The position numbers and the translations under genes were made by a program. The notes under the pieces are model-generated. The model was not told where the DNA came from, made no database searches, and worked only from the letters and a program-made list of their open reading frames with translations. Shown in pieces: positions 715-44,684 of a stretch of DNA of 64,000 nucleotides. Every line of letters begins with the position of its first letter. Within the stretch, counting starts at the first letter, position 1. Location: contig JANJGN010000838.1 in the NCBI GenBank assembly GCA_026770705.1, positions 1 through 64,000 of the forward strand, read 5' to 3'. The DNA is from Isurus oxyrinchus. Lineage: Eukaryota.

Positions 715-2812
715 TCATTTATGGGATGTGGGTGGCACTGTCTAAGCCAGAATTATTGCCCATCCCTAATGGGCCTTGAGAATGTGGTAGTGAGCTGCCG
801 TCTAGAACTGTTGTAGTCCATGTTGGGTAGGTACACCCACAGTGCTGTTAGGGAGGGAATTGCAGGATTTGGACCCAGTGACAGTGAAGGAACGGCCGAT
901 ATATTTCCAAGTCAGGATGGTGAGTGACTTGGAGGGTAACTTCCAGGTGGTGGTGTTACCATGTATCTGCTGACCTGTACTTTGAGATGGTACTGGTCGT
1001 GTGTTTGAAGGTGCTGCCTAAGGAGTTTTGGTGAGTTCCTGCAGTGCACCTTGTAGCTGGTACACACTGCTGCTACTGTGTGTCGCTTGTGCAGAGAGTG
1101 AATGTTTGTGGATGGGGAGCCGAACTAGTGGGGCTGCTTTGTCCTGAGTGGTGTTGAGTTTATTGAATCTTGTTGGAGCTGCACTCATCCAGGCAAGTGG
1201 AGAGTCTTCCATCACACTCCTGACCTGTGCCTTGAAGACGGTGGACAGGTTTTGGGGAGTCTGGAGTGAGTTACTCACTGCATGATTCCCAGCCTCTGAC
1301 CTGCTCTTGAAACCACAGTATTTTTATGGCTGGTCCAGTACAATTTCTGGTCAATGGTAACCACCAGGATGTTGATAGTGGGGTATTCAGCAGTGGTAAT
1401 GTCATTGAACATCAAGGAGCGATGGTTAGATTCTCTCTTATTGGAGATGGTCATTGCCTGACACTTGTCAGCCCAAGCCTGGATATTGTCCAGGTCTTGC
1501 TGCATTTGGACAAGGACTGCCTCAGTATCTGAGGAGACGTGAATGGTGCTGAACATTGTGCAATCATCAGTGAACATCCACACTTCTGTCCTTATGATGG
1601 AAGGAAGGTCATTGATGAAGCAGCTGAAAGTGGTTGCGCCTTGGACACTACCCTGAGGAACTCCTGCAGTGATGTCCTGGAACTGGGATGATTGACCTCC
1701 AACATCCACAACTATCTTCCTTTGTGCTGGGTATGGCTCCAACCAGTGGAGAGTTTTCCCTCTGTTATGATGTGGTAGATGATGTGTGCCAGGGGACCAA
1801 ATCCACAAGGGAAACTTGGTCACACTATCACAACGGTTTTGCAATTTGTATTTATTATGAGATGTGTGCACTGAATTCAGGAGTAATGTGTCAACCAAGA
1901 CATTTAGAGATCTTAAAAATTAAATTTTAATATTTATTTAAGATTTAAAGCACACACATAAGGATACGGTTACTATTATAACAAATCCTAAACTTCCTAA
2001 TTAACCTTGAAGATGGTGGACAGGCATTGGGAAGTCTGGAAGTGAGCAGTAAAACTCCTTTTAGGCAATAAACCAAAATAGATTTCAGATTTAAAAACAA
2101 AACCAGCAAGTTAACACAAAACACACTTGAGAGTGGATTTCCAAATGGCTTTCTCGAACGACAGTCACTGAACATAACAGACCTATGGACAAATGCCTGG
2201 AGGCTTCTTCAAGGCTGATTCACACACTCTTGTTAGATTTTACATGGTCCCCAAAATAGCCTTTCATTCTCCTTTGTTGATGTTTCTCTCTCTTTGATAT
2301 GTAAATTTCATTGTTCCAAATGTCTTGGGAATTATACTTTTCCCATAATATAAAAACTTTCATGTTGCCAATGTTGTCAATAACCTTTGGGGAAAAATAA
2401 ACACACTCCTTTGCCTTGCATATCGGCCTCATTGTAAACAGACCAACAGCCCTTTGAAATCCAAACAATCCCGTCACTAATCTAAAAATGCAAATTCCCT
2501 TTCTCACCTCACATGCAAAGGAAGCCTCCATGTTCACTCATTAGCATTTCAAGTACATTTCTACACCTAGCTTCTTCTGATAATCTCAAACTTGCAGTCT
2601 ACCTGACTCCAGATGTAATTAAGCCACACAGACAGACCCATCTACACTCACACCCATAAACCTAGTTTACAACAAAACAGGAAAATATTATGCAAATTAT
2701 TATAATTTCATACCACCCCTGATCACATTGACTCCAGTTTTACTCGGGATCCTAGGTGCCACATTCGGTCAAATGCAGCCTTGATGTAAAAGGCAGTCAC
2801 TCTCACCTCACC
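715..2812 (-). mobile_element. Degraded non-LTR retrotransposon (CR1/L2 group) with RT remnant and 3' tail, split by an insertion at 1763-2715
   Basis: ORF 1275-1898 contains GVPQGSV...FINDL...MFTDDCT RT motifs. Element sequence appears to resume at ~2716. Confidence 0.8.
1763..2715 (-). mobile_element. Solo-LTR-like insertion
   Basis: Ends TGTTATGA...TCATACCA, interrupts a LINE, and resembles the 3751-4683 element in the opposite orientation. Confidence 0.6.
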
Positions 2813-3004
2813 TTGTATTAACAGAAGTAAAATTACACATAATACAAAAGCTTCTCACAATCTTTTACAGCATGGAAAAAGGTGCAGCATTCAGAAAGCT
2901 CACTCAGAACCAATAAAAAAAGTTGAGCAACATCATATTTGTGTTCATTACTATTTGGCCATGTTGGCTGCACACACTCCACAGCCCCGCTCCCTGTTTC
3001 ACAC

Positions 3005-3253
3005 TCAATTTTTCTGGAACCTGATCTGTGTGTATTCTGTGTCCTCGCTCCTGTGCACAGTCCTGTCACCGCTGGGCAGCTTTGAAAAGTTGATGTTGGC
3101 GTAGAAAAGCTCGCCTGGTTTGTCGGGGTTCCCATGTCCAACATCGCCTCCCACTGCATCTTCAGAGAGACCCCGGGGAGCTGGGGTCTCCCCCTCGCTA
3201 GTTGCGTCTCTCTTTGTGTTCTGGGGCTCAGTAATCAGCACGTTCTGTTCATC
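3005..3253 (-). CDS. Tail cassette 4 terminal exon DEQN...GELFYANINF...TEYTQIRFQKN* (ITIM-like plus ITSM-like)
   Basis: Intact acceptor, 249 nt open. LFYANI and TEYTQI parallel the CD33 motifs LHYASL and TEYSEV. Confidence 0.8.
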   Translation of the reverse strand, partial: DEQNVLITEPQNTKRDATSEGETPAPRGLSEDAVGGDVGHGNPDKPGELFYANINFSKLPSGDRTVHRSEDTEYTQIRFQKN

Positions 3254-3750
3254 CTACAGAGAAATGGAAACAGAAGACATCCTCACATCAATTACTGTTA
3301 CTGATAGGGTTAAATTATTGTGCAGACTCATTTAATTCTCTCTCTCCTATCGGATAAAAGAAACCACCAATGGCAGTGCAGCACTCCCTCAGTACTGACC
3401 CTCCAACAGTGCAGCACTCCCTCAGTCCTGACCCTCTGACAATACAGCGCTCCCTCAGTACTGACCCATCGACAGTGCAGCACTCCCTCAGTACTGACCC
3501 TCTGTCAGTGCAGCACTCCCTCAGTACTGACCCTCCAACAGTGCAGCACTCCCTCAGTACTGACCCTCCAACAGTGCAGCACTCCCTCAGTACTGACCCT
3601 CTGTCAGTCTCACACTCAATCGGTAATGGCTCTGGTGAGTGACGGCTTGTATGCTGCACACAGGTGCCTGGTGTGAGGCTCAATAACATGAACCTTGTAA
3701 TCAGAGAGAGGATTAGAGAGAGAGATAGAGATGAAGGGACAGAGACAGAG

Positions 3751-4683
3751 TGTTATGAATCTATTAATGTATGTAATGTAATTGCAAACTGTCTTTTTAA
3801 ACAGAGGTTTAGTCTGTGTGTGTGCCTGTGTGTATTTTAATTGGATTAAAGACAGCCAGTCTGGGTGCTTTGATGTATAGTAGTTTTGAGATGTAAACAA
3901 AGAGGTAAAGTGGTAATTTGCATTTTTAAATAACACATTCAAAGCCTGAGAGTGAAATCTTAAACCAATCAACGTTTATATTACTAATAAAATTGATACG
4001 ATGAAAGGGGATTTATTATTGGAAGAGATGGAGTTCAAAGGTCCTGATGATACAATGCGAATTTACCTTCAAACAGAAGCCATAAGACCATCAGACATAG
4101 GAGGAGAAATTAGACCATTCGGTCCATCGAGTCTGCTCCACCATTCATACATGGCTGATAAGTTTCACAAACCCCATTCTCCCACCTTCTCTCCTAACCT
4201 TTGATCCCCTGACCAATCAAGAGCGTATCAATCTCCGTCTTCTTTACACTCAAGAGCTGGGTATAACTTGAGCAGTTTTGTGTGTGCAGAGCAGACGCTT
4301 GTAACAGCAAAGCAGCTGTAAGCCTACACCTGTCTGCAAAAAAACCAAAGTGAAAGGAACCTCATTTGGAATTTGTGAGGTGAAAATGCTTTGCCTGGTG
4401 TCTGCTTAAAGACAATGGGTTGTCTTAGAGGAGATTAGTTTGAGAATTTGTTAAAAATTTATGATAATACTAGTTTGTAGCCATGTGCATATGTTTAACT
4501 TGTGTAAATTAATAAATGTCTCAAGTAGTTTGATATAAAACCATCTCGAGAACTGGTGGTCTTATTCCTGAATTTAGAGATGCATCTCAAACATTCCACT
4601 GGGAAATATAGGTTATGACAGTTGTTTAAAGTTTCCCTCTGGGATTTTAAACAACAGCCTTTACCAGTTGCTGTGTCATAACA
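3751..4683 (+). mobile_element. Solo-LTR-like element (copies at 6836-7769, 9854-10787, 12946-13699)
   Basis: Inverted termini TGTTATGA...TCATAACA and an internal AATAAA. A CR1-tail fragment is nested at ~4073-4250 in three of the four copies. Confidence 0.65.
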
Positions 4684-4818
4684 GAGAGACAGCATGATAC
4701 TGAACCATTGCTGACTCCACAGATACAAATCAGTGGGTAACTGGGCTGGGAATCTGGGACATGTGTTGTCTACACACTGAGATTGAAGCTTTGGAGTGAG
4801 TGTAAACAGCTCCTGTAC

Positions 4819-4900
4819 CTGGTGTTTCACAGAGAGTGAACTGGGGGTCAATGCAATGTCACTGGTCCCTGAAACTCTCTCCTCCATCGCTGTCTTTCTC
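4819..4900 (-). CDS. Tail cassette 4 juxtamembrane exon RKTAMEERVSGTSDIALTPSSLSVKHQ
   Basis: Intact AG and GT sites, 82 nt, open frame. Confidence 0.7.
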
Positions 4901-5042
4901 CTGCAATAACACAATATCACACTGTGGTTATCATATAGCAGCGAGTCAGTGCAGCACAGACACAGAGTCCTCTGTAACCTTACACCGACAACTGGACTGT
5001 CTCTTTAAATCAGTTCTGCACAAAGCACAGAATCAAGAAACT

Positions 5043-5485
5043 TGACACCATCCAGGACAAAGCAGCCCGATTGATCTACACCCCATCCACCACATTAAAC
5101 GTTCACTCCCTCCACCACGAACACACAGTGGCAGCAGTGTGTGTACCATCTACAAGATGCACTGCAGCAACTCAGCAAGGCTCCTTCAACAGCACCTTCT
5201 AAACCCACGACCTCTACCATCTAGAAGGACAAGGGCAGCAGACACATGGGAACACCACCACCTGGAAGTTCCCCTCCAAGTCACTCAGCATCCTGACTTG
5301 GAAATATATCACCGTTCCTTCACTGTCGCTGGGTCAAAATCCTGGAACTCCCTCTCTAAAATCACTTTGGGTGTACCTACGCCACATGGACTGCAGCGGG
5401 TCAAGAAGGCAGCTCACCACCACCTTCTCAAGGGCAATTAGGGATGGGCATTAACGCTGACATCACCAGTGACAGCCACATTCGA
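5043..5485 (+). mobile_element. LINE 3'-end fragment (copies ~8129-8571, 11147-11589, 14059-14510)
   Basis: Similar to the reverse complement of ~760-1170 (TIYKMHCSNS...FTVAGSKSWNSL). Confidence 0.75.
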
Positions 5486-5517
5486 TGAAAGAATTAAAAA
5501 TCTCACAGCTCAATGTA

Positions 5518-5523
5518 TTTATT
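5518..5523 (-). terminator. Candidate poly(A) signal AATAAA, tail cassette 3
   Basis: tttatt on the + strand, ~535 nt downstream of the stop. Confidence 0.45.
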
Positions 5524-6056
5524 GTGATCCTGCTGCACACACGCCCTGTCGAAGGAGCCTTTGTGGTTCCATTGTTAATCGAAGCAGATCAGAGTTACTA
5601 CAACTACTTGCATTTATATAGCACCTTCAATGTAGCAAAATGTCCCAAGGCTCATCCGGGGCTTGTTAGTGACATCTTCACCTGACTCTGAGGCACATGA
5701 GGAGATATTAGGGACAGGAGACCAACAGCTGAGTCAACAAAGTCAGTTATTAACGGGCATCTTAAAGGAGGAGCTGGAGATAGAGAATGAGAGACAGACA
5801 CAGAAAGAAAGACAGAGAGAGGGAGAGAGAGAGAGAGACAGAGAGACAGAGAGAGACAGTGAATCTCGGTCCCCAATGGCTCAGCATCCAGTCCTCTCTG
5901 GAGAAGCATTTCATTCCAAACCACACCAATCGCAGCCCAATTCCATCCCTTCCTCCCTCTCTCCCCCTGTCCCCCGGTGGGTTGCTTCCTGTTCCCAGGA
6001 ATCTCAATCCCTACCCCCACACCCACACCTCCTCACTCCCATTCCCCATTTCTCAT

Positions 6057-6305
6057 TCAGTTATGCTCGAACCTGATCTGTGCGTATTCCGTCTCCTCTT
6101 CCCTGTGGACAGACCCATCACCACTGGACATCCTCAAGACTTGGGGATTGGCGTAGAGAAACTCTTCAGGTTTGTCGGGGTTCCCATGTCCAACATCGGC
6201 TCCCACTGCATCTTCAGAGAGACCCCGGGGAGCTGGGGTCTCCCCCTCGCCAGTTGCGTCTCTCTTTGTGTTCTGGGGCTCAGTAATCAGCACGTTCTGT
6301 TCATC
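6057..6305 (-). CDS. Tail cassette 3 terminal exon DEQN...EEFLYANPQV...TEYAQIRFEHN*
   Basis: Intact acceptor, 249 nt open. Confidence 0.7.
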   Translation of the reverse strand, partial: DEQNVLITEPQNTKRDATGEGETPAPRGLSEDAVGADVGHGNPDKPEEFLYANPQVLRMSSGDGSVHREEETEYAQIRFEHN

Positions 6306-7904
6306 CTACAGAGAAATGGAAACAGAAGACATCCTCACATCATTTACTGGTACTGATAGGGTTAAATTATTGTGCAGACTCATTTAATTCTCTCTCTCCT
6401 ATCGGATAAAAGAAACCACCTATGGCAGTGCAGCACTCCCTCAGTACTGACCCTCCAACAGTGCAGCACTCCCTCAGTGCTGACCCTCCGACAATACAGC
6501 GCTCCCTCAGTACTGACCCATCGACAGTGCAGCGCTCCCTCAGTACTGACCCTCTGTCAGTGCAGCACTCCCTCAGTACTGACCCTCCAACAGTGCAGCA
6601 CTCCGTCAGTACTGACCCTCTGTCAGTGCAGCACTCCCTCAGTACTGACCCTCCAACAGTGCAGCACTCCCTCAGTACTGACCCTCTGTCAGTCTCGCAC
6701 TCAATCGGTAATGGCTCTGGTGAGTGACGGCTTGGATTCTGCACACAGGTGCCTGGTGTGAGGCTCAATAACATGAACCTTGTAATCAGAGAGAGGATTA
6801 GAGAGAAAGATAGAGATGAAGGGACAGAGACAGAGTGTTATGAATCTATTAATGTATGTAATGTAATTGCAAACTGTCTTTTTAAACAGAGGTTTAGTCT
6901 GTGTGTGTGCCTGTGTGTATTTTAATTGGATTAAAGACAGCCAGTCTGGGTGCTTTGATGTATAGTAGTTTTGAGATGTAAACAAAGAGGTAAAGTGGTA
7001 ATTTGCATTTTTAAATAACACATTCAAAGCCTGAGAGTGAAATCTTAAACCAATCAACGTTTATATTACTAATAAAATTGATACGATGAAAGGGGATTTA
7101 TTATTGGAAGAGATGGAGTTCAAAGGTCCTGATGATACATTGCGAATTTACCTTCAAACAGAAGCCATAAGACCATAAGACATAGGATGAGAAATTAGAC
7201 CATTCGGTCCATCGAGTCTGCTCCACCATTCATACATGGCTGATATGTTTCACAAACCCCATTCTCCCACCTTCTCTCCTAACCTTTGATCCCCTGACCA
7301 ATCAAGAGCGTATCAATCTCCGTCTTCTTTACACTCAAGAGCTGGGTATAACTTGAGCAGTTTTGTGTGTGCAGAGCAGACGCTTGTAACAGCAAAGCAG
7401 CTGTAAGCCTACACTTGTCTGCAAAGGAACCAAAGTGAAAGGAACCTCATTTGGAATTTGTGAGGTGAAAATGCTTTGCCTGGGTGTCTGCTTAAAGACA
7501 ATGGGTTGTCTTAGAGGAGATTAGTTTGAGAATTTGTTAAAAATTTATGATAATACTAGTTTGTAGCCATGTGCATATGTTTAACTTGTGTAAATTAATA
7601 AATGTCTCAAGTAGTTTGATATAAAACCATCTCAAGAACTGGTGGTCTTATTCCTGAATTTAGAGATGCATCTCAAACATTCCACTGGGAAATATAGGTT
7701 ATGACAGTTGTTTAAAGTTTCCCTCTGGGATTTTAAACAACAGCCTTTACCAGTTGCTGTGTCATAACAGAGAGACTGCATGATACTGAACCATTGCTGA
7801 CTGCACAGGTACAAATCAGTGGGTAACTGGGCTGGGAATCTGGGACACGTGTTGTCGACACACTGAGATTGAAGCTTTGGAGTGAGTGTAAACAGCTCCT
7901 GTAC

Positions 7905-7986
7905 CTGGTGTTTCACAGAGAGTGGACTGGGGGTCAATGCAATGTCTCTGGTCCCTGAAACTCTCTCCTCCATCGCTGTCTTTCTC
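7905..7986 (-). CDS. Tail cassette 3 juxtamembrane exon RKTAMEERVSGTRDIALTPSPLSVKHQ
   Basis: Intact AG and GT sites, 82 nt, open frame. Confidence 0.7.
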
Positions 7987-8603
7987 CTGCAATAACACAA
8001 TATCACACTGTGGTTATCATATAGCAGAGAGTCAGTGCAGCACAGACACAGAGCCCACTGAAACCTTACACCGACAACTGGACTGTCTCTTTAAATCAGT
8101 TCTGCACAAAGCACAGAATCAAGAAGCTTGACACCATCCAGGACAAAGCAGCCCGATTGATCGACACCCCATCCCCCACATTAAACATTCACTCCCTTCA
8201 CCATGAACACACAGTGGCAGCAGTGTGTGTACCATCTACAAGATGCACTGCAGCAACTCAGCAAGGCTCCTTCAACAGCACCTTTCAAACCCACGACCTC
8301 TACCATCTAGAAGGACAAGGGCAGCAGACACATGGGAACACCACCACCTGGAAGTTCCCCTCCAAGTCACTCACCATTCTGACTTGGAAATATATCAACG
8401 TTCCTTCACTGTCGCTGGGTCAGAATCCTGGAACTCCCTCTCTAACAGCACTTTGGGTGTACCTACACCACATGGACCGCAGTGGGTCAAGAAGGCAGCT
8501 CACCACCACCTTCTCAAGGGCAATTAGGGATGGGCATTAACGCTGACGTCACCAGTGACAGCCACATTCGATGAAAGAATTAAAAATCTCACAGCTCAAT
8601 GTA

Positions 8604-8609
8604 TTTATT
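8604..8609 (-). terminator. Candidate poly(A) signal AATAAA, tail cassette 2
   Basis: tttatt on the + strand at the homologous position. Confidence 0.45.
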
Positions 8610-8874
8610 GTGACCCTGCTGCACACACGCCCTGTCGAAGGAGCCTTTGTGGTTCGATTGTTAATCGAAGCAGATCAGAGTTACTACAACTACTTGCATT
8701 TATATAGCACCTTCAATGTAGCAAAATGTCCCAAGGCTCATCCGGGGATTGTTAGTGACATCTTCACCTGACTCTGAGGCACATGAGGAGATATTAGGGA
8801 CAGGAGACCAACAGCTGAGTCAACAAAGTCAGTTATTAACGGGCATCTTAAAGGAGGAGCTGGAGATAGGGAAT

Positions 8875-8935
8875 GAGAGACAGACACAGAAAGAAAGACA
8901 GAGACAGGGCGAGAGAGAGAGAGAGAGAGGGAGAG

Positions 8936-8977
<42 letters not shown>
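8875..8977. repeat. (GA)n-rich microsatellite in tail 3' UTR (also ~5785-5857, 11893-11987)
   Basis: Directly visible; length differs between units. Confidence 0.9.
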
Positions 8978-8979
<2 letters not shown>

Positions 8980-9176
8980 TGAATCTCGGTCCCCAATGGC
9001 TCAGCATCCAGTCCTCTCTGGAGAAGCATTTCATTCCAAACCACACCAACCGCAGCCTAATTCCATCCCTTCCTCCCTCTCTCTCCCTCTCCCCCAGTGG
9101 GTTGTTTCCTGTTCCCAGGAATCTCAATCACTACCCCCACCCTGATACCTCTTCACTCACTCTCCCCATTTCTCAT

Positions 9177-9425
9177 TCAGTTATGCTCGAACCTGATCTG
9201 TGCGTATTCCGTCTCCTCTTCCCTGTGGACAGACCCATCACCACTGGACATCCTCAAGACTTGGGGATTGGCGTAGAGAAAATCTTCAGGTTTGTCGGGG
9301 TTCCCATGTCCAACATCGCCTCCCACTGGACCTTCAGAGAGACCCCGGGGAGCTGGGGTCTCCCCCTCACTAGTTGTATCTCTGGTTGTGTTCCGGGGCT
9401 CAGTAATCAGCACGTTCTGTTTACC
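9177..9425 (-). CDS. Tail cassette 2 terminal exon GKQN...EDFLYANPQV...TEYAQIRFEHN*
   Basis: Intact acceptor, 249 nt open. Confidence 0.7.
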   Translation of the reverse strand, partial: GKQNVLITEPRNTTRDTTSEGETPAPRGLSEGPVGGDVGHGNPDKPEDFLYANPQVLRMSSGDGSVHREEETEYAQIRFEHN

Positions 9426-10922
9426 CTACAGAGAAATGGAAACAGAAGACATCCTCACATCATTTACTGGCACTGATAGGGTTAAATTATTGTGCAGACT
9501 CGTTTAATTCTCTCTCTCCTATCGGATAAAAGAAACCACCTATGGCAGTGCAGCACTCCCTCAGTACTGACCCTCCAACAGTGCAGCACTCCCTCAGTGC
9601 TGACCCTCCGACAATACAGCGCTCCCTCAGTACTGACCCTCCGACAGTTCAACATTCCCTCAGTACTGTCCCTCCGACAGTGCAGCACTCCCTCAGTACT
9701 GACCCTCTGTCAGTCTCGCACTCCCTCGGTAATGGCTCTGGTGAGTGACGGCTTGGATGCTGCACACAGGTGCCTGACGTGAGGCTCATTAACAAGAACC
9801 TTGTAATCAGAGAGAGGATGAGAGAGAGGGATAGAGGAGGGAGAGAGACAGAGTGTTATTAATCTATTAATGTTTGTATTGTAATTGCAAACTGTCTTTT
9901 TAAACAGAGGTTTAGTCTGTGTGTGTGTCTGTGTGTATTTTAATTGGATTAAAGCCAGCCAGTCTGGGTGCTTTGATGTATAGTAGTTTTGAGATGTAAA
10001 CAAAGAGGTAAAGTGGTAATTTGCATTTTTAAATAAAACATTCAAAGTCTGAGAGTGAAATCTTAAACCAATCAACGTTTATATTACTAATAAAATTGAT
10101 ACGATGAAAGGGGATTTATTATTGGAAGAGATGGAGTTCAAAGGTCCTGATGATACATTACGAATTTACCTTCAAACAGAAGCCATAAGACCATAAGACA
10201 TAGGAGGAGAAATTAGACCATTCGGTCCATCGAGTCTGCTCCACCATTCATACATGGCTGATATGTTTCACAAACCCCATTCTCCCACCTTCTCTCCTAA
10301 CCTTTGATCCCCTGACCAATCAAGAGCCCATCAATCTCCGTCTTCTTTACACTCAAGAGCTGGGTATAACTTGAGCAGTTTTGTGTGTGCAGAGCAGATG
10401 CTTGTAACTTCAAAGCAGCTGTAAGCCTATACTTGTCTGCAAAGGAACCAAAGTGAAAGGAACCTCATTTGGAATTTGTGAGGTGAAAATGCTTTGCCGG
10501 GGTGTCTGCTTAAAGTCTATGGGTTGTCTTAGAGGAGATTAGTTTGAGAATTGGTTAAAAATTTATGATAATACTAGTTTGTAGCCATGTGCATATGTTT
10601 AACTTGTGTAAATTAATAAATGTCTCATGTAGTTTGATATAAAACCATCTCGAGAACTGGTGGTCTTATTCCTGAATTTAGAGATGCATCTCAAACATTC
10701 CACTGGGAAATATAGGTTATGACAGTTGTTTAAAGTTTCCCTCTGGGATTTTAAACAACAGCCTTTACCAGTTGCTGTGTCATAACAGAGAGACTGCATG
10801 ATACTGAACCATTGCTGACTCCACAGGTACAAATCAGTGGGTAACTGGGCTGGGAATCTGGTACACGTGTTGTCTACACACTGAGATTGAAGCTTTGGAG
10901 TGAGTGTAAACAGCTCCTGTAC

Positions 10923-11004
10923 CTGGTGCTTCACAGAGAGTGAACTGGGGGTCAATGCAATGTCACTGGTCCCTGAAACTCTCTCCTCCATCGCTGTCTT
11001 TCTC
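10923..11004 (-). CDS. Tail cassette 2 juxtamembrane exon RKTAMEERVSGTSDIALTPSSLSVKHQ
   Basis: Intact AG and GT sites, 82 nt, open frame. Confidence 0.7.
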
Positions 11005-11621
11005 CTGCAATAACACAATATCACACTGTGGTTATCATATAGCAGAGAGTCAGTGCAGCACAGACACAGAGCCCACTGAAACCTTACACCGACAACTGGA
11101 CTGTCTCTTTAAATCAGTTCTGCACAAAGCACAGAATCAAGAATCTCGACACCATCCACAACAAAGCAGCCCGATTGATCGACACCCCATCCACCACATT
11201 AAACATTCACTCCCTCCACCATGAACACACAGTGGCAGCAGTGTGTGTACCATCTACAAGATGCACTGCAGCAACTCAGCAAGGATCCTTCAACAGCACC
11301 TTCCAAACCCACGACCTCTACCATCTAGAAGGACAAGGGCAGCAGACACATGGGAACACCACCACCTGGAAGTTCCCCTCCAAGTCACTCACCATCCTGA
11401 CTTGGAAATATATCACCGTTCCTTCACTGTCGCTGGGTCAAGATCCTGGAACTCCCTCTCTAACAGCACTGTGGGTGTACCTACACCACATGGACCGCAG
11501 CGGGTCAAGGAGGCAGCTCACCACCACCTTCTCAAGGGCAATTAGGGATGGGCATTAACGCTGACATCACCAGTGACAGCCACATTCGATGAAAGAATTA
11601 AAAATCTCACATCTCAATGTA

Positions 11622-11627
11622 TTTACT
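11622..11627 (-). terminator. Candidate variant poly(A) signal AGTAAA, tail cassette 1
   Basis: tttact on the + strand at the homologous position. Confidence 0.35.
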
Positions 11628-11953
11628 GTGACCCTGCTGCACACACGCCCTGTCGAAGGAACCTTTGTGGTTCCATTGTTAATCGAAGCAGATCAGTGTT
11701 ACTACAACTACTTGCATTTATATAGCACCTTCAATGTAGCAAAATGTCCCAAGGCTCATCCGGGGCTTGTTAGTGACATCTTCACCTGACTCTGAGGCAC
11801 ATGAGGAGATATTAGGGACAGGAGACCAACAGCTGAGTCAACAAAGTCAGTTATTAACGGGCATCTTAAAGGAGGAGCTGGAGATAGGGAATGAGAGACA
11901 GACACAGAAAGAAAGACAGAGACAGGGAGAGAGAGAGAGAGAGAGAGAGGGAC

Positions 11954-11989
<36 letters not shown>

Positions 11990-12185
11990 TGAATCTCTAT
12001 CCCCAATGGCTCAGCATCCAGTCATCTCTGGAGAAGCATTTCATTCCAAACCACACCAACCGCAGCCCAATTCCATCCCTTCCTCCCTCTCCCCCCTCTC
12101 CCCCAGTGGGTTGTTTCCTGTTCCCAGGAATCTCAATCACTACCCCCACCCTGATACCTCCTCACTCACTCTCCCCATTTCTCAT

Positions 12186-12434
12186 TCAGTTATGCTCGAA
12201 CCTGATCTGTGCGTATTCCGTCTCCTCTTCTCTGTGGACAGACCCATCACCACTGGACATCCTCAAGACTTGGGGATTGGCGTAGAGAAACTCTTCAGGT
12301 TTGTCAGGGTTCCCATGTCCAACATCGCCTCCCACTGCATCTTCAGAGAGACCCCGGGGAGCTGGGGTCTCCCCCTCGCCAGTTGCGTCTCTCTTTGTGT
12401 TCTGGGGCTCAGTAATCAGCACGTTCTGTTTACC
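12186..12434 (-). CDS. Tail cassette 1 terminal exon GKQN...EEFLYANPQV...TEYAQIRFEHN*
   Basis: tttctctgtag acceptor, phase 0, 249 nt to stop, two Tyr motifs placed as in CD33-related Siglecs. Confidence 0.85.
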   Translation of the reverse strand, partial: GKQNVLITEPQNTKRDATGEGETPAPRGLSEDAVGGDVGHGNPDKPEEFLYANPQVLRMSSGDGSVHREEETEYAQIRFEHN

Positions 12435-15400
12435 CTACAGAGAAATCGAAACAGAAGTTATCCTCACATCATTTACTGGCACTGATAGGGTTAAATTATT
12501 GTGCAGCCTTGTTAATGTCAGTCGTGTCTCAGTTGGTTTAACCCTCTCTCTCATGTCATATGAAAGATACCACCTATGGCAGTGCAACGCTCCCTCAGGA
12601 CTGACCCTCCGACAGTGCAGCGCTCCCTCAGTACTGACCCTCCGACAGTGCAGCGCTCCCTCAGTATTGACCCTCCGACAGTGCAGCGCTCCCTCAGTAC
12701 TGACACTCCGACAGTGCAGCTCTCCCTCAGTACTGACCCTCCGACAGTGCAGCACTCCCTCAGTACTGACCCTCTGTCAGTCTTGCACTCCCTCGGTAAT
12801 GGTTCTGGTGAGTGACGGCTTGGATTCTGCACTCAAGTGTCTGGTGTGAAGCTCATTAACATGCACCTTGTAATCAGAGAGAGGATGAGAGAGAGAGAAA
12901 GAGAGAGAGAGAGAAAGAAAGGGAGGTTGGGATAGAGAGAGAGACTGTCATGATGCGATTAATAAATATTATGTTATTGGAAATTATTTTTATTCACATC
13001 GGGGTTTAGTCTGTGGGTGTGTCTGTGTGTGTTTTAATTGGATTAAAGCCAGCCAGTCTGGGTATTTGATGTATAGTAGTTTTGAGATGTAAACTGAGAG
13101 ATAGAGATTTGTATTTTTAAACAGAGCATTCAAAGCCTGGGAGTGAAATCTTAAACCAATCAACATTTATTTTATTGATAAAATTGATACTATGACAGAG
13201 GATTTATTGTTAGAAGAGATGGAGTTCAAAGGTCCTGATGATTCAATGAGAATTTACATTCAAAGAGCAGTGTTGGGTATAACTTGAGCAGTTTTGTGTG
13301 TGCAGAGCAGAGGCTTGTAACATCAAAGCAGCTGTAAGCCTACACCTGTCTGCAAAGGAACCAAAGTGAAAGGAACCTCATTTGGAATTTGTGAGGTGAA
13401 AATGCTTTGCCTGGAATCTGCTGAAAGTCTACGGGTTATCTTAGAGGAGATTAGTTTGGGAATTTGTTAAAATGTTATGATAATGCTAGCTTGTAGCCAT
13501 GTGCATATGTTTAACTTGTGTTAATTAATAAATGTCTCATGTAGATTGATATAAAACCATCTCGAGAACTGGTGGTCCTATTCTTGAATTTAGAGCTGCA
13601 TCTCAAACATTCCACTGGGAAATATAGGTTATGACAGTTGTTTAAAGTTTCCCTCTGGGATTTTAAACAACAGCCTTTACCAGTTGCTGTGTCATAACAG
13701 AGAGACAGCATGATACTGAACCATTGCTGACTCCACAGGTACAAATCAGTGGGTAACTGGGCTGGGAATCTGGGACACATGTTGTCTACACACTGAGATT
13801 GAAGCTTTGGAGTGAGTGTAAACAGCTCCTGTACCTGGTGATTCACAGAGAGTGGACTGGGGGTCAATGCAATGTCTCTGGTCCCTGAAACTCTCTCCTC
13901 CATCGCTGTCTTTCTCCTGTAATAACACAATATCACACTGTGGTTATCATATAGCAGAGAGTCAGTGCAGCACAGACACAGAGCCCACTGTAACCTTACA
14001 CCAATAACTGGACTCTCTCATTAAATTACATCTGCACAAAGCACAGAATCTAGAATCTCGACACCATCAACAACAAAGCAGCCCGATTTATCGACACCCC
14101 ATCCACCACATTAAACATTCACTCCCTCCACCATGAACACACAGTGGCAGCAGTGTGTGTACCATCTACAAGATGCACTGCAGCAACTCAGCAAGGCTCC
14201 TTCGACAGCACCTTCCAAACCCACGACCTCTACCATCTAGAAGGACAAGGGCAGCAGACACATGGGAACACCACCACCTGGAAGTTCCCCTCCAAGTCAC
14301 TCACCATCCTGACTTGGAAATATATCACCGTTCCTTTACTGTCGCTGGGTCAAGATCCTGGAACTCCCTCTCTAACAGCACTGTGGGTGTACCTACACCA
14401 CATGGACTGCAGCGGGTCAAGAAGGCAGCTCACCAACACCTTCTCAAGGGCAATTAGAGATAGCATATTAATAGCGGCCTCATCAGTGACCGCCACATTC
14501 GATGTAAGAATTTAAAATCTCACAGCTCAGGAGGAAGCCACTCAGCCTATCGTGCCTGTGCTGGCCCTTTGTAAAAACTGTCCAATTAGTCCTAAACAAA
14601 TTTTTATATTAAAATCAAGTTAAATCTTCAGACTTACTTTCTCACACAGATGAAGATGAAGATTTCAGCCAGTAAAACACTCAACATGATCCCAGCCGTG
14701 AACAATCCTACTGTCCATTTACTGGTGTCTCTACCTGTAAAAACAGCCATGAATTACTGCACTACAGGTTTGGAATGATGCTCCGATGTATCTCTTCCTC
14801 CCTCCTCTCCATCTGTAAAGTACCTAGTCTNNNNNNNNNNNNNNNNNNNNNNNNNNNNNNNNNNNNNNNNNNNNNNNNNNNNNNNNNNNNNNNNNNNNNN
14901 NNNNNNNNNNNNNNNNNNNNNNNNNNNNNNNNNNNNNNNNNNNNNNNNNNNNNNNNNNNNNNNNNNNNNNNNNNNNNNNNNNNNNNNNNNNNNNNNNNNN
15001 NNNNNNNNNNNNNNNNNNNNNNNNNNNNNNNNNNNNNNNNNNNNNNNNNNNNNNNNNNNNNNNNNNNNNNNNNNNNNNNNNNNNNNNNNNNNNNNNNNNN
15101 GTTGAAGTTTGCATTAACTCACGTTCCACAGTGATGATTATGAACCCCTCCACTGCTCCATGTTCATTCTCTGCCACACACTGATAGTCTCCAGTGTCCC
15201 TGGATGTAACGTGAGGAATCACCAACCACAGCTCATTGTTGGAACTTGTTCTGTTCATTGGGACATTAAGATGTCGCCACGTCAGGTTAGAAGCTGGGAA
15301 GCTCTCGACAGAGCAGATTATCACTGCAGAATTCCCCTCAATTATATTGATCGATGAAGCATTAATCACATCAAGAGAAGCAATTGAGAGATTCTGTGGT

Positions 15401-18400
15401 GCGTCTGAAAACAAATAAAGATCAGTTGCTTACATTGACTGTGAAACACTTTGAGAGACTTTGAGAATGTGAAAGGTGTGACATCAATGAAGGTTCCTTC
15501 ACCACAAAGCACATAATCCAGGCAGACACTTCAGTTCAGCACTGAGAGAGTGCTGAGGGAGAGCTGCACTGTAGCAGGTGCAGTGCTGATGGAGTGCTGC
15601 ACAGTCAGACTGTCAGTTCTGATTGAGAACTGCAATGTGGGAGGGACAGTACTGAGGGAGCATTGCACTGTTAGAGAGTCAGTAATGAAAGAGTGCTGCA
15701 CTGTGGGTAGGTCAGTACTGAGGGAGAGCTGCACTGTAGCAGGTGCAGTGCTGATGGAGTGCTGCACAGTCAGACTGTCAGTTCTGATTGAGAACTGCAA
15801 TGTGGGAGGGACAGTACTGAGGGAGCATTGCACTGTTAGCGAGTCAGTACTGAGGCAAACACACTGTTGGCTGTATACTTCAGGCCCTCTATGGTCAAGT
15901 GGAGCACCATGTACCTTTAAGAGAATGCAAGCGGACTAACCATGTGACAGTACTGACCAATCATCAGACAGGTTGGGCTACTGGGTAACTGTATTTCTCG
16001 AGCTGGAGGTGGTTGTGGGGGTGCGCAAGGATTCAGTGTTCAGTCCTCTGCTACAATAAATAATCACAGTTTGTTCTTATGTCTGTCTCTGTCCGTTACT
16101 GATAGTAAGAATCAACTAGCGAGTGTATATGAAGGTGTGCAATTCGAGTTTACTCGACTGGTGAATTCAGAGACTCAAGACATAAAACTGGGGGTGAGGA
16201 TGAACACAGCTAAAAACACAGCCCCTGAGTGAGGACCCACAAGGCCAGTGGCGCAGAGCATTAGAAAGAGAATCTGTACGGAGGGTGTAAAATAGGCTGC
16301 AGTCCGAGCAGGAAGCAGTGCTGCACTGAGAATTTGGGGGAAAAACCCTGCAGAATCCTGATCACAGGGATCCCAGCAAAACTCAAAGAGAGCACGAAAC
16401 CCAGCGCAGAAAAGACAAGAGCGACAGAGAGGGAGTTAACAAAGAGGTGACTGCTCTTAAAGCAACAATACATTTAAAGAGGTACATGAAAGGACAATGG
16501 CTGTGGACAGAATGTTATAAGAGACCCCAGAGAGCGGGTAACTCTGCGGAAGGTAAAAGATGAATCAATCGACGGCAGTGAAGGAAGCTGCAGTAAGACA
16601 AACACCTGAATTGGACATTAACTGGGAAGACATCGGAAGTGCTGCCCCCTTGCAGTCGTCGACGATGCTGCAGTTCCGGCGTGTCGATCCATTCAACCCC
16701 ATTTCAGGTGACTGGTCTCAGTGTGTCGAACGCCTAGTGTTCTTTTTTTACCGCTAATGACATCACGGGAGAGGAGAAGAAGAGGGAGATTCTTGTATCC
16801 ACATGTGGGAGCAAAACGTCCGGGCTGATCCTCAGCCTCACGTCACCGACCATCCCCGACTCGAAGACTGTCAACCAGTGAATAAAAATTGTTCCAAACC
16901 ACCTGAGACCACAGCCCTCAGTTACTATTCAGCACTTCATCACCCATATCAAACCCTTACCCTACCGCCCAGCATCGAACGGCAGGGCTGAGCAGGGCAT
17001 CCAAACCTTTAAATCCAGGGTGAGAAAGATGGAAGGGGATTCCATCGGCACGAGATTGTCCCGGTTCCTCTTCACAAACTGGGCCAGGCCACAAACAACG
17101 ACCAGCATTGGCCCTGCAGAACTACTAATGAAGAGACATCTCCGCACCCACCTGACCCTTATCCAGCCGGATTTAAAGGGGAGGCTGGAGAAAAGCCAAG
17201 AGACGCAGGAGACCAGGCACGATGGTCATGCTGGGAAAGAACTTTCACTGTGGGAGGTGCAGTCCTCGCGATGAACTATGGAGATGGGTCCAATTGGCTG
17301 TTAGGCAAGGTGAGTGCAGTAACTGGATCCCTCTCCTCTCATGTATCAGTAAGCGACACATGGATCATTTCCCCAAAATAACGCTGGTCCCACAAGAAGA
17401 AATGAAGTCTTCATCTACACTTGAGTCTGGGCCACATGTAGAGGACAGGTCCCAAAATTTGGAAGGAGCAACATTCGAGAAAGCCTCCTGAGAGACTTGA
17501 TTTGTAAATAGTTATTAGTGTAATTAGTTCACTGGTTATTAAGTTTGTCAACTGCACTTTTTAAGTAAAGGGGGAAGGATGTGGTAAAGTGGAGTTCCAT
17601 GTACAGTTAAGAGAATGCAAGTGGATAAACCATGTGACAGTGCTGCCCAATCATTGTACAGTGCGGGCTACTGGTTAACTGTAAGTCTAGAGCTGGAGGT
17701 GGGTGTGGGAACATGCAAGGATTTAGTGCTCTGCCCTCTTGTAATAAATAATCAGCTTGTTCTAATGTCGGTCTCTCTTGGTTATTGATAGCGAGCATCA
17801 ACTAACAAGTGTATATGAAGGAGTGCAATTCGAGTTTACTCAACCAGTGAACTCATAGACTCAAGATATAAAACCAACAAACAGTCAGGGAGAGATGGAC
17901 AATCCAACATGTGATCACATTTCAGAGATGTGTAAGAATAATAAAGCAGTAATACTCAGGGATTTTAACTACCCAAATATTAACTGGGACAGCTTTAGTG
18001 AGCAAGGTAGGGAGGGAGAAAAATTCTGAAGTTGCATCCAGGAGAACTTTTTTAGTCTGTGCATAGAAAGCTCAACAAGGGAGGGGACAGTTCTGGACCT
18101 AATATATGGAAAAGCGCCGGGAAAGGTGGAAAGCGTATCAGTAGGGGAGATAGTGATTGTAACTCAATTGGATTTAGGACAGGTATGGAGAAGGATAAGT
18201 TTGTGCTGGGAATAAAAATTCTAAACTGGGGAAAGGCTAATTTTTCTAAGATGAGATATGATTTAGTCCAATTGGACTGGGAGAAGCTCTTTGCAGATAA
18301 AACTGTGTCAGAGCAGTGGGAGGCATTCAAGGAGGGAATAGCGAGAGTACAGAGCAGATATCTTCCTGTAAAGACAAAGAGGGAGACCAAGTCTGGAGAA

Positions 18401-26800: not shown

Positions 26801-27270
26801 CAAGAGCTGTTTATCTCGTTCTAGCCTGGTGCTGTTTGCCTTTACCTTATCTCTTTACCCTCAGCATCTCTTTATGTCTCTTCTCGAGTTAATCCCTTGT
26901 GATCTTCAATGCCTTTCTGGAGAGTTCTGCTGATGTCAGCCCCATGGTGCACAAGGTTCACCTGGAGAATTCTGCTGACCTTGGGTTTTCACTAATAGAA
27001 GTCCCTGTTTAACTCTTATATCAGTGTCCAACAGCCGAGTGGCGCAGGTACCTCAGTAGTCGGTCACCTTTAGTTAGAGCCTGTAATGCGGAGACAGGCT
27101 TTGAGTTGAAAGCACACAAGTGTAGCTGCTGAGTTCCTTTGTAAATAAGCAGAATGTGTTTCATCTAAGAACTGTCTGCTGATCTACTCTGTCTATTGTA
27201 CCTACTCAGCCTCTCCAAAACAAGCCTGGATCCATAAGTCCCAACAAACTCGTGAGCAGCATCCAACAGT
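23890..27270 (+). mobile_element. Degraded Gypsy-type LTR retrotransposon
   Basis: Gag-like HCEFG...MLRDRLVCSINEDAIQKRLL, protease VDTGA, integrase C-terminus VGETVYVKDFREGPKW, and PPT taaagggggaggg at ~26525 followed by a probable 3' LTR. Ends are approximate. Confidence 0.85.
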
Positions 27271-27377
27271 ATCAATAATTAATGTATGTATTGTGGGTGG
27301 AATTTTCGATTTGGATCAATAATACTAAACACTGATCACTCTGATTGTCACTCTGATCATTTCTGTTTCTATTACAG

Positions 27378-27494
27378 AAGAAAGATGAGAAGGATCTGGA
27401 AATGAAATCTAACCGCGGAGTCAATCCTGATACAGATGATGATCTTTACGCAAACTGTGATTTTGCCAAGGATTCTGTTTATGGGAATTTATAA
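27378..27494 (+). pseudogene. Orphan terminal cytoplasmic exon KKDEKDLEMKSNRGVNPDTDDDLYANCDFAKDSVYGNL*
   Basis: ttctgtttctattacag acceptor, phase-0 open frame of 38 aa, two YxN motifs after acidic residues. No upstream plus-strand exons found in the window. Confidence 0.6.
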
Positions 27495-29530: not shown

Positions 29531-29619
29531 GGGAAAAAGGTTAGTCACATTCGGACACAGCCTTGGCACTCCAAGGTTTAACAGTTTGCTTTCATACTTT
29601 GACAGCAACCACCTCCCAC

Positions 29620-29840
29620 TTTGTCTCACAGTGACACATCCACCCTTTCTCATTAAATACACAGAGGGAGCAGCACAGGAAGAGGTCATTCAGCCCAAGC
29701 AGAGTGTGTGGGCAGTTCCTCCCCAGGCGAGCAGTCGGACAGGTCCTGGGTAAGTAACGGAACGATTGGAATTCACTTCCACCACCAACACCGTCCTTTG
29801 TTGATGTTGTGACTTTATAAAGACAGATTCCAATAATTCA
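29620..29840 (+). pseudogene. Orphan copy of the putative Siglec promoter / first non-coding exon (partial copy also at 42259-42400)
   Basis: Near-identical to 33510-33725, donor at 29750, truncated by satellite. Confidence 0.7.
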
Positions 29841-34089: not shown

Positions 34090-34129
34090 ATGATCGGGAA
34101 ATCTTACTTCCTCCTGTCACTTCTCCAAG
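34090..34129 (+). CDS. Cassette A leader exon MIGKSYFLLSLLQ
   Basis: Identical peptide to the minus-strand leader, GTAATA donor, exon start 34048. Confidence 0.8.
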
Positions 34130-34929: not shown

Positions 34930-35030
34930 AGACAATGAGGATCCAAAGAGATTCCTTCAACAATGAGGATCCAAAGATATTCCTAAAACAATGAGGATCC
35001 AAAGTGATTCCTCAGTCAATGAAGGTCCAA
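34930..35030 (+). repeat. 28-bp tandem repeat (caatgaggatccaaagagattccttaga) in the leader-V intron, 3-4 copies per gene
   Basis: Also at ~45487-45587, 55532-55605 and inverted at ~21420-21520. Confidence 0.8.
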
Positions 35031-44644: not shown

Positions 44645-44684
44645 ATGATCGGGAAATCTTTCTTCCTCCTGTCACTTCTCCAAG
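44645..44684 (+). CDS. Cassette B leader exon MIGKSFFLLSLLQ
   Basis: Intact ATG and donor. Confidence 0.8.

What the first reader, a model, noticed from the sequence alone, without database searches (positions are those of the whole stretch)
3005..12434. The alternative tails differ in signalling motif: ITIM intact only in the most distal copy
Seen: tails 1-3 read EE/DFLYANPQV...TEYAQI; tail 4 reads GELFYANINF...TEYTQI. Known: an ITIM is (I/V/L/S)xYxx(L/V, loosely I) and recruits SHP-1/2; an ITSM is TxYxx(V/I); pYxN binds Grb2. Pro at Y+3 and Phe at Y-2 break the ITIM in tails 1-3 but leave YxN and the ITSM. Inference: cassette choice could switch the receptor between a fully inhibitory form and an ITSM/Grb2-only form.
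Basis: partly seen in the sequence, partly recalled or inferred. Interest (0 to 1): 0.8.

Follow-up and report, generated by a model that had tools for sequence, protein, structure and literature searches.

The report
Shark Siglec gene with repeated tail modules
A shark immune-receptor gene of the Siglec type carries four tandem copies of the two exons that encode its signalling tail, and these copies look like in-frame modules spliced one after another into a long tail rather than four alternative endings.

Summary
Four 249-nt minus-strand tail exons exist (12434..12186, 9425..9177, 6305..6057, 3253..3005). Tails 1-3 read FLYANP...TEYAQI. Only tail 4 fits the ITIM pattern (LFYANI), and all four fit TxYxx(I/V).

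The "cassette choice" reading is only partly supported. Each ~3.1-kb unit holds two exons, an 82-nt cyt1 exon and a tail exon. Every tail exon has a GT 13 nt before its stop. Cyt1 plus tail-to-GT is 315 nt, or 105 codons, so a cassette is frame-neutral.

Contigs from four public runs (two samples, RNA only guessed) carry exactly this joint, 6073->4900 with GT..AG ends, reading TEYAQIR|RKTAMEE. Seven of 42 fetched RefSeq proteins from Carcharodon and Cetorhinus show the same junction, either A-A or A-B.

The likeliest product is TM-(cyt1-tailA)x3-cyt1-tailB, with the ITIM only in the last module. Endings at tails 1-3 are neither shown nor excluded.

The array looks like an ancestral A-B pair expanded by unequal crossing-over inside the tail exon. 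Follow-ups of this scan on other pieces of the same genome reached the same series reading.

The parts
22340..22379 (-). Leader exon (MIGKSYFLLSLLQ, ends in phase 1, followed by gtaat)
21021..21389 (-). V-set Ig exon of Siglec type (369 nt), with ...YLFRIEF... arginine aligned to the FR of MAG
   Evidence: Pfam V-set E 3.6e-13 and Ig_CD22 7.3e-10. The best solved-structure matches are MAG, Siglec-5, Siglec-8, sialoadhesin and CD33, at E 1e-15 to 1e-12. Boundaries.
19781..20077 (-). First C2-set Ig exon (297 nt)
   Evidence: Pfam C2-set_2 E 7.7e-8; boundaries
15123..15404 (-). Second C2/I-type Ig exon (282 nt)
   Evidence: Pfam Ig_3 E 5.8e-13; boundaries
14831..15100 (.). Run of N (270) in the intron between the Ig exon and the TM exon; left unfilled
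14638..14734 (-). Transmembrane exon (97 nt; RDTSKWTVGLFTAGIMLSVLLAEIFIFICVR, ends with 2 nt of a codon, donor AAA|gtaagt). It is the only TM exon seen upstream of the cassettes.
13835..13916 (-). cyt1 exon of cassette 1 (82 nt, ag|...|gt)
12186..12434 (-). Tail exon 1, type A (FLYANP / TEYAQI). The internal GT donor follows 12202 and the stop is at 12186-12188.
   Evidence: 72/78 identical to the internal cassette of P0032
10923..11004 (-). cyt1 exon of cassette 2 (82 nt)
9177..9425 (-). Tail exon 2, type A; internal GT donor after 9193
7905..7986 (-). cyt1 exon of cassette 3 (82 nt)
6057..6305 (-). Tail exon 3, type A. The internal GT donor follows 6073 and is seen joined to 4900 in contigs.
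   Evidence: joint
4819..4900 (-). cyt1 exon of cassette 4 (82 nt); acceptor of the observed joint
3005..3253 (-). Tail exon 4, type B (LFYANI ITIM pattern and TEYTQI); terminal
   Evidence: Contigs run through its stop into the 3' UTR (record 13 at 2942-3187). 66/80 identical to the terminal cassette of P0032.
1851..3004 (-). Unique sequence behind tail 4, the probable 3' UTR. AATAAA on the minus strand lies at 1933-1938 and 1851-1856.
   Evidence: contigs tile 1827-3249 (table 8)
5518..5523 (-). AATAAA 539 nt behind the stop of tail 3. The same signal lies at 8604-8609 behind tail 2, and the tail 1 copy reads AGTAAA. These are possible poly(A) signals for A-ending isoforms; their use is not shown.

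Best explanation
This is the 3' end of a complete minus-strand Siglec-type receptor gene (leader, V-set, two C2 Ig exons, one TM exon). Its cytoplasmic tail is built from a tandem array of four two-exon cassettes.

Each type-A tail exon (1-3) is a composite exon. A GT donor 13 nt before its stop lets it splice in frame to the cyt1 exon of the next cassette. One cassette adds exactly 105 residues carrying one YANP site and one TEYAQI site. Tail 4 (type B) is the true last exon, with the only ITIM-pattern site, a TEYTQI site and a long 3' UTR.

The predicted main product is TM-(cyt1-tailA)x3-cyt1-tailB. By arithmetic this is about 424 cytoplasmic residues with eight tyrosine motifs, one ITIM-pattern site at the far end and four ITSM-type sites.

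What is shown: the exon structure, the reading frames, the motifs, and the A-tail to cyt1 and cyt1 to tail junctions in transcript-like contigs and in relatives' gene models.

What is inferred: that all three A cassettes of this particular locus are included, and what the motifs recruit. The array arose from an older A-B pair by unequal crossing-over inside the tail exon.
For: 1. Structure. All four cyt1 exons are 82 nt with ag/gt borders. All four tail exons are 249 nt with GATCAG|GTTC at nt 233. 82+233 = 315 = 3x105. The TM exon ends in phase 2 and cyt1 ends in phase 0.

2. Joints. The joint 4899->6072, 'skips 1172, ends CT..AC (cut +1)', corresponds on the minus strand to a GT..AG intron from exon end 6073 to exon start 4900. 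It appears in 1 contig in each of the 4 runs laid; X1-X3 are one sample and X5 is another organism and study. The same call shows cyt1 to tail junctions: back-joints 6301->4819/4818 in X1 and X2, and a loose end at 3249 in X3.

3. Relatives. 7 of 42 fetched proteins carry two cassettes in series with the junction TEYAQIR|(R/K)K(T/K)A. These are P0001, P0016, P0017 and P0031 (A-A) and P0018, P0032 and P0033 (A-B), all RefSeq models of Carcharodon carcharias or Cetorhinus maximus.

4. Tail 1 is 72/78 identical to the internal cassette of P0032, and the alignment ends at ...TEYAQIR. Tail 4 matches its terminal cassette 66/80.

5. Contigs read through the stop of tail 4 into 3' UTR that ends at AATAAA signals.

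6. Mosaic of the units. Intron B of U2-U4 is alike (93-100%) and differs from U1 (77-91% plus an indel). The tail 3' half plus downstream segment is alike in U1-U3 (90-100%) and unrelated in U4 (43-57%).
Against: - The runs are Logan contigs whose RNA nature is only guessed. Contigs also lie on introns (table 8).
- The joint is carried by one contig per run, with only 25-29 letters on the shorter side. It was laid at min_likeness 90, and the tool warns that such joints can come from repeats or relatives.
- The family has many paralogs. The cyt1 sequence in the loose end at 3249 matches none of the four window copies exactly, so the joints are family-level evidence and not proof for this locus.
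- No contig linking the TM exon to a cassette was seen, because the TM exon was outside the stretch laid.
- How many cassettes are included is unknown.
- The internal donor (CAG|GTTCGA) is weak by eye.
- AATAAA signals lie behind tails 2 and 3.
Confidence: 0.68

Rival explanations
1. First reader's model. The four cassettes are mutually exclusive alternative endings of one receptor. Choice of cassette switches the receptor between an ITIM+ITSM tail (tail 4) and an ITSM/YxN-only tail (tails 1-3).
For: - Every tail exon has its own stop.
- AATAAA lies 539 and 573 nt behind the stops of tails 3 and 2.
- The TM donor is phase-compatible with every cyt1 acceptor.
- 11 fetched single-cassette proteins of Carcharodon or Cetorhinus end in a type-A tail, so type A can be a terminal tail.
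Against: - The A tail is seen spliced onward to a cyt1 exon in 4 of 4 runs laid and in 7 of 42 fetched gene models, so exclusivity fails.
- No contig or model that ends at an A tail could be assigned to this locus.
- The AATAAA behind tail 1, the first site met, is mutated to AGTAAA.
- P0020 (type A) and P0021 (type B) of Cetorhinus, which might have looked like isoforms, are paralogs that differ throughout, 407/458 identical.
Confidence: 0.12
2. Recent, largely neutral copy-number expansion. Only part of the array is used, for example cassette 1 then cassette 4, or cassette 4 alone. The middle copies are skipped or variably included with no function of their own.
For: - Units are 94-96% identical over about 3.2 kb.
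- U2 and U3 are chimeras of U1 and U4.
- The closest Carcharodon models have only two cassettes, A-B.
- Differences among the cyt1 copies and among the 5' halves of the tails are mostly amino-acid-changing and no rarer than in the introns.
- Cassettes are frame-neutral, so skipping costs nothing.
Against: - All 8 cassette exons keep open frames, splice sites and the internal donor.
- The 3' halves of tails 1-3, which carry both tyrosine motifs, differ at only one silent position, and their protein sequence is identical to that of Carcharodon P0018 and P0032.
- Nothing in the sequence marks the middle cassettes as weaker.
Confidence: 0.15
3. The fourfold array is an assembly artefact, a mis-expanded two-cassette locus.
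For: There is a 270-N gap 100 nt upstream of the TM exon, and tandem repeats are hard to assemble.
Against: - The copies differ by 4-6% with copy-specific substitutions and indels, and have a consistent mosaic. Collapsed or duplicated reads would not give this.
- The scan noted a similar fourfold array on another piece of the same genome (unchecked by me).
Confidence: 0.05

Closest known systems
RefSeq models of lamniform shark Siglec-like genes: XP_041037239.1 'sialic acid-binding Ig-like lectin 10' and XP_041037234.1 (Carcharodon carcharias), XP_078389619.1 'sialic acid-binding Ig-like lectin 8' (Cetorhinus maximus)
   Same: They share the TM, the cyt1 and both tail types. The in-frame junction ...TEYAQIR|RKTA... 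is identical. A type-A module is followed by a type-B end (P0018, P0032, P0033) or by a second type-A module (P0001, P0016, P0017, P0031). Tail 1 is 72/78 identical to the internal module of P0032, and tail 4 is 66/80 identical to its end.
   Different: Those models have two modules, while this locus has four (A-A-A-B). They are automatic annotations, and I found no paper describing the arrangement.
CD33-related Siglecs of mammals (inhibitory Siglecs)
   Same: The domain order is V-set with the sialic-acid arginine, then C2 Ig domains, then one TM. The tail has a membrane-proximal ITIM-pattern site and a distal TxYxx(I/V) site, as in tail 4. That mammalian tails have this pair of motifs is recalled, not tested here.
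   Different: The tail module is repeated here, and in the internal modules the proximal site is YxNP instead of an ITIM. No mammalian protein reached E 0.001 with the tail as query; the 13 hits were 11 proteins with this shark tail (10 traced to shark records) and two weak low-complexity matches.
CD22 (Siglec-2)
   Same: It works in a similar way: a Siglec with a long tail carrying several tyrosine motifs, inhibitory ones plus a Grb2-type YxN site, on one molecule (recalled).
   Different: The CD22 motifs are not products of a recent tandem exon-cassette duplication. The V exon here matches CD22 structures only weakly (E about 1e-6 to 1e-5, against 1e-15 for MAG and Siglec-5).
Composite internal/terminal exons, e.g. 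the immunoglobulin mu heavy-chain secreted/membrane choice (recalled)
   Same: One exon holds an internal 5' splice site just upstream of its own stop, with a poly(A) signal downstream. Splicing onward removes the stop.
   Different: Here the exon is repeated three times in series. Use of the downstream poly(A) signals is not shown.
Tail-switching ITIM receptors such as CEACAM1-L/S and PECAM-1 (recalled)
   Same: Alternative use of small cytoplasmic exons changes the set of tyrosine motifs.
   Different: Those genes use exon skipping within a single set of exons, not a tandem array of duplicated two-exon cassettes.

Membership tests
Siglec (sialic acid-binding Ig-like lectin) | N-terminal V-set Ig domain related to Siglec V domains | tested here: met
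   Pfam V-set E 3.6e-13 and Ig_CD22 E 7.3e-10. The top 18 solved-structure matches are all Siglecs (MAG, Siglec-5, -8, -1, -10, CD33, -7, -15), at E 1e-15 to 9e-10.
Siglec (sialic acid-binding Ig-like lectin) | Conserved arginine on the F strand that binds the sialic-acid carboxylate | tested here: met
   The query's ...gpylFRief... aligns with MAG's ...kyyFRgdl... in the printed alignment. That this is the ligand arginine is recalled.
Siglec (sialic acid-binding Ig-like lectin) | C2-set Ig domains and a single transmembrane segment | tested here: met
   C2-set_2 E 7.7e-8 and Ig_3 E 5.8e-13. The TM exon encodes a hydrophobic stretch of about 23 residues.
Siglec (sialic acid-binding Ig-like lectin) | Binds sialylated glycans | not testable with these tools
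   Needs a glycan array or binding assay.
ITIM | (I/V/L/S)xYxx(I/V/L) | tested here: met
   Met only by tail 4 (LFYANI). Tails 1-3 (FLYANP) do not match, so 1 of 4.
ITIM | Phosphorylated and recruits SHP-1/SHP-2 | not testable with these tools
   Needs phosphopeptide pull-down or receptor assays.
ITSM | TxYxx(V/I) | tested here: met
   TEYAQI in tails 1-3 and TEYTQI in tail 4, so 4 of 4.
Mutually exclusive alternative terminal cassettes | A transcript contains one cassette only; cassettes are never joined to each other | tested here: not met
   The A-tail to next-cyt1 joint with GT..AG ends appears in contigs of 4 of 4 runs. Two cassettes in series occur in 7 of 42 fetched proteins. The evidence is family-level and the locus of origin of the contigs is not proven.
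Composite internal/terminal exon (splice versus polyadenylation choice) | Internal 5' splice site upstream of the exon's own stop, and it is used | tested here: met
   GATCAG|GTTCGAGC lies 13 nt before the stop in tails 1-3. The joint is at exactly that site.
Composite internal/terminal exon (splice versus polyadenylation choice) | Poly(A) site behind the exon that is used when the donor is not | tested here: inconclusive
   AATAAA lies 539 and 573 nt behind tails 3 and 2, and AGTAAA behind tail 1. Contigs lie on that segment (5425-5765) but also on plain introns, and contigs cannot show RNA ends.

The most novel reading that the evidence does not exclude
Each type-A tail exon is a decision point between cleavage/polyadenylation and splicing onward, as in the immunoglobulin mu secreted/membrane choice. 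One gene would then yield a nested ladder of receptors with 1, 2, 3 or 4 signalling modules. Only the full-length form would carry the ITIM. Cells could tune the receptor from YxNP/ITSM-only signalling to strongly inhibitory signalling by changing poly(A)-site or splice-site strength. Copy number of the cassette, two in Carcharodon models and four here, would be an evolvable dial for tail valency.
Probability: 0.2. Interest if true: 0.65.

Novelty: new variant of a known kind. Interest (0 to 1): 0.45.

Why it matters
Inhibitory Siglecs set activation thresholds of immune cells through a few tyrosine motifs in a short tail. In this gene a vertebrate lineage has multiplied the whole tail module by duplicating a frame-neutral two-exon cassette. 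Only the last module keeps the ITIM, and the inner ones carry a conserved YxNP site.

This offers a natural series for two questions. One is how the number and order of ITIM, ITSM and YxN sites shape signalling. The other is how composite terminal exons let a duplicated 3' end become internal coding sequence.

It also corrects a tempting misreading. Tandem copies of a last exon, each with its own stop, need not be alternative endings.

Tried and rejected
- **Short-protein search with tail 4.** The search for homologous proteins found nothing. Its length window of 45-143 aa excludes full-length relatives. The library-wide HMMER search then found 13 proteins.
- **Orthologous loci.** I therefore could not check internal donors, cassette numbers or dN/dS in other species. 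The cross-species argument rests on proteins only.
- **P0020 and P0021.** I considered that these two Cetorhinus proteins, of the same length but with type A versus type B ends, were isoforms of one gene. I rejected this because they differ throughout, 407/458 identical.
- **P0035.** I considered counting this 1278-aa protein as multi-cassette. I rejected it because its two tails are separated by a second ectodomain, which looks like two genes fused in one model.
- **Depth.** I looked at depth as a measure of exon use. The tool states that contig depth cannot rank parts of a gene, and contigs also lie on introns, so I use only joints and the positions of contigs.
- **Selection among the four copies.** There are too few differences to test. 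Cyt1 has 3 variable sites in 82 nt, and the 3' halves of tails 1-3 differ at 1 site.
- **Literature.** Four searches found nothing on modular or tandem Siglec tails in sharks: 35 papers, 15 listed; 3 papers; 6 papers; 2 papers. I saw only the listings and abstract starts and read no paper. Supplements were closed and not asked for.
- **Joined model.** Exons were searched one by one. The length of the predicted tail is arithmetic only.
- **Species.** The species of the window was not determined. The nearest proteins are from Carcharodon and Cetorhinus, at 83-92% over the tails.


Full report
**What is there**

The stretch 3005-14734 lies in the 3' part of a minus-strand gene. Going upstream on that strand, the exons are:
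- a leader exon (22379..22340, MIGKSYFLLSLLQ);
- a V-set exon (21389..21021);
- a C2-set exon (20077..19781);
- a second Ig exon (15404..15123);
- a run of 270 N (14831-15100, left as it is);
- one TM exon (14734..14638).

All Ig exons are phase 1 and join to give the same boundary residues as related shark proteins, for example ...TVE-R-RD(S/T)SKW... in P0001.

Pfam gives V-set E 3.6e-13, Ig_CD22 7.3e-10, C2-set_2 7.7e-8 and Ig_3 5.8e-13. The V exon's 18 best solved-structure matches are all Siglecs, at E 1e-15 to 9e-10. The FR arginine aligns with that of MAG. The gene is a Siglec-type receptor.

**The observation**

Four tail exons of 249 nt, stop included, lie at 12434..12186, 9425..9177, 6305..6057 and 3253..3005.
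- Tails 1-3 read ...FLYANPQVLRMSSGDGSVHREEETEYAQIRFEHN*.
- Tail 4 reads ...LFYANINFSKLPSGDRTVHRSEDTEYTQIRFQKN*.

Each tail has two tyrosines. The ITIM pattern matches 1 of 4 tails (tail 4), the TxYxx(V/I) pattern 4 of 4, YxN 4 of 4, and YxxP 3 of 4.

1. The repeat unit of about 3.1 kb (94-96% identity between units) holds two exons. An 82-nt exon, cyt1, sits at 13916..13835, 11004..10923, 7986..7905 and 4900..4819. It encodes (K)RKTAMEERVSGT(R/S)DIALTPS(P/S)LSV(N/K)HQ and has ag/gt borders. The tail exon follows about 1.4 kb further on.
2. Tail 4 is nearly identical to tail 3 through the intron and the first ~137 nt of the exon. It diverges only from just before the first tyrosine.
3. All four tail exons carry GATCAG|GTTC 13 nt before the stop. 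The TM exon ends in phase 2, cyt1 takes 1 nt and ends in phase 0, and tail-to-GT is 233 nt. So cyt1 plus truncated tail is 315 nt, or 105 codons. A cassette can be added or left out without changing the frame.

**Transcript evidence**

One search for runs listed no run on record as RNA. It listed small runs guessed to be RNA that hold 19-31% of the words of 1800-6400 (X1-X4, one sample), and others that hold less.

I laid X1, X2, X3 and X5 on 1800-6400 at 90% likeness. X5 is from another organism code and another study, and all four are Logan contigs.

**The series joint.** In each of the 4 runs, one contig carries the joint 4899->6072, described as 'skips 1172, ends CT..AC (cut +1)'. On the minus strand this is an intron that begins GT at 6072 and ends AG at 4901. 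It joins exon end 6073, the internal donor of a type-A tail, to exon start 4900, the cyt1 acceptor. The joined reading is ...TEYAQIR|RKTAMEE..., in frame.

**The cyt1 to tail joints.** The same call shows cyt1 to tail junctions. There are back-joints 6301->4819 (X1) and 6301->4818 (X2), with the 3-4 differing first letters of the tail between them. There is also a loose end at 3249 in X3 that is the 3' end of a cyt1 exon.

**Tail 4 as last exon.** Contigs run through the stop of tail 4 into the sequence behind it (record 13, 2942-3187; records 12, 19, 25). Together they tile 1827-3249, down to the AATAAA signals at 1933 and 1851.

**Limits of this evidence:**
- The shorter side of the joint is 25-29 letters.
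- The runs' RNA nature is guessed.
- Contigs also lie on introns (records 3-6, 14-16, 20-22) and on the segment behind tail 3 (records 7, 8, 23, 31). The runs therefore hold unspliced material too, and position alone does not mark an exon.
- The tool forbids ranking by depth.
- The cyt1 in the loose end at 3249 matches none of the four window copies exactly, so paralogs contribute.
- The TM exon was outside the stretch laid, and read laying is capped at one call.

**Relatives**

A library-wide HMMER search with tail 4 gave 13 proteins at E<=0.001. Eleven carry this tail, and the 10 of them that I looked up come from shark records. The other two are weak low-complexity matches.

A second search, using the two-cassette region of P0001, and two cluster look-ups brought the total to 42 proteins.

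Seven of the 42 have two cassettes in series, with the junction TEYAQIR|(R/K)K(T/K)A:
- A-A: P0001 and P0017 (Cetorhinus maximus), P0016 and P0031 (Carcharodon carcharias).
- A-B: P0018, P0032 and P0033 (Carcharodon).

Tail 1 of the window is 72/78 identical to the internal module of P0032, and the alignment stops at ...TEYAQIR. Tail 4 is 66/80 identical to its terminal module.

The type-A proximal site (Yx[NS]P) occurs in 18 of the 42 proteins, all from Carcharodon or Cetorhinus. The 9 proteins from carpet sharks, catsharks and houndsharks all have the type-B form: P0006, P0007, P0008, P0009, P0015, P0011, P0027, P0025 and P0026. So type B looks ancestral and type A looks like a lamniform derivative. 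This sample was collected by similarity and is not a census.

Eleven single-cassette proteins end in a type-A tail, so type A can also be a last exon in some genes. P0020 (type A) and P0021 (type B) are paralogs, not isoforms.

These are automatic RefSeq models.

**Origin of the array**

I aligned the four units in 150-column windows.
- Intron B is alike in U2, U3 and U4 (93-100%). It differs from U1 (77-91%, with an indel of roughly 130-180 nt).
- The 3' half of the tail exon and the ~570 nt behind it are alike in U1, U2 and U3 (90-100%). In U4 they are unrelated (43-57%).

U2 and U3 are therefore chimeras, with the front of U4 and the back of U1. This is what unequal crossing-over inside the shared 5' half of the tail exon would make from an older A-B pair, the state seen in the Carcharodon models. 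It agrees with the scan's note s1-869236.

**Mechanism proposed**

The type-A tail exon is a composite exon. If its weak internal donor (CAG|GTTCGA) is used, its stop is removed and the next cassette is added. Tail 4 ends the message.

The likeliest main product is TM-(cyt1-tailA)x3-cyt1-tailB. By arithmetic this is 3x105 + 27 + 82 residues after the TM exon. The product would have three YANP sites, one ITIM-pattern site and four TxYxxI sites.

What these sites recruit is inference from consensus only:
- YxN is the Grb2-type pattern.
- TxYxx(V/I) is the ITSM pattern.
- That pYxxP suits other SH2 domains is recalled, not tested.

Whether some messages end at tails 1-3 is open. AATAAA lies 573 and 539 nt behind tails 2 and 3, and AGTAAA lies behind tail 1.

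**Comparison and novelty**

The gene is a member of the Siglec family by its ectodomain. The terminal module has the ITIM plus ITSM-type pair known from inhibitory Siglecs.

The new element is the serial, frame-neutral tail cassette with a composite exon and its expansion to four copies. It is visible in automatic gene models of two other lamniform sharks. I found it in no paper in four full-text searches (listings only).

Follow-ups of this scan on other pieces of the same genome reached the same series reading (s1-872013, s1-865407, s1-865411). I saw these after and they are not independent support.

I rate it a new variant of a known kind, of moderate interest.

Noticed in passing
window 34090-37220, 44645-47774, 54688-57792 (+ strand): There are three tandem ~10-kb units (93-97% alike). 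Each holds a leader exon (MIGKS(Y/F)FLLSLLQ), a Siglec V-set exon and a first C2 exon on the + strand, head-to-head with the gene studied. No TM or cyt1 exon was found between them by my motif scans. They could be repeated 5' modules of a gene that continues beyond 64000, or truncated gene copies. Related shark proteins with two or three V domains in series exist (P0002, P0009, P0016, P0022).
   Followed up: partly
window 29840-32238, 41148-42260, 51278-52564, 61295-62539; also 3308-3640, 6360-6760, 9480-9750, 12514-12850: Arrays of a 33-nt unit (...CAGTGCAGCACTCCCTCAGTACTGACCCTC...) run up to 2.4 kb. A short array of the same unit sits in the intron between cyt1 and the tail exon of every cassette, and contigs pile up there in all runs.
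   Followed up: no
window 4076-4252: A contig of run X3 (record 21, 110 letters on the shorter side) skips 175 nt inside the cassette-4 intron. Unit 1 lacks a similar piece of this intron. The contig probably comes from unit 1 or a paralog, and it shows that the runs hold unspliced or genomic sequence.
   Followed up: partly
window 14831-15100: A run of 270 N lies in the intron between the last Ig exon and the TM exon. The exon phases fit without a further exon, but a small exon hidden there cannot be excluded. It was not filled.
   Followed up: no
window 15500-19670 and 23900-29800: Retroelement debris lies in and beside the gene. There are reverse-transcriptase-like ORF pieces near 19339-19566 (+) and gag/protease-like ORFs at 24202-25429 (+). 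They account for the long intron between the two C2 exons.
   Followed up: no
proteins P0003 and P0036 (Carcharodon carcharias): P0003 has the type-B tail with Cys in place of the ITIM tyrosine (LLCANINF). P0036 has the same ectodomain type but a different TM with an arginine and a short tail, the look of an activating partner receptor. The family seems to hold paired inhibitory and activating forms.
   Followed up: no
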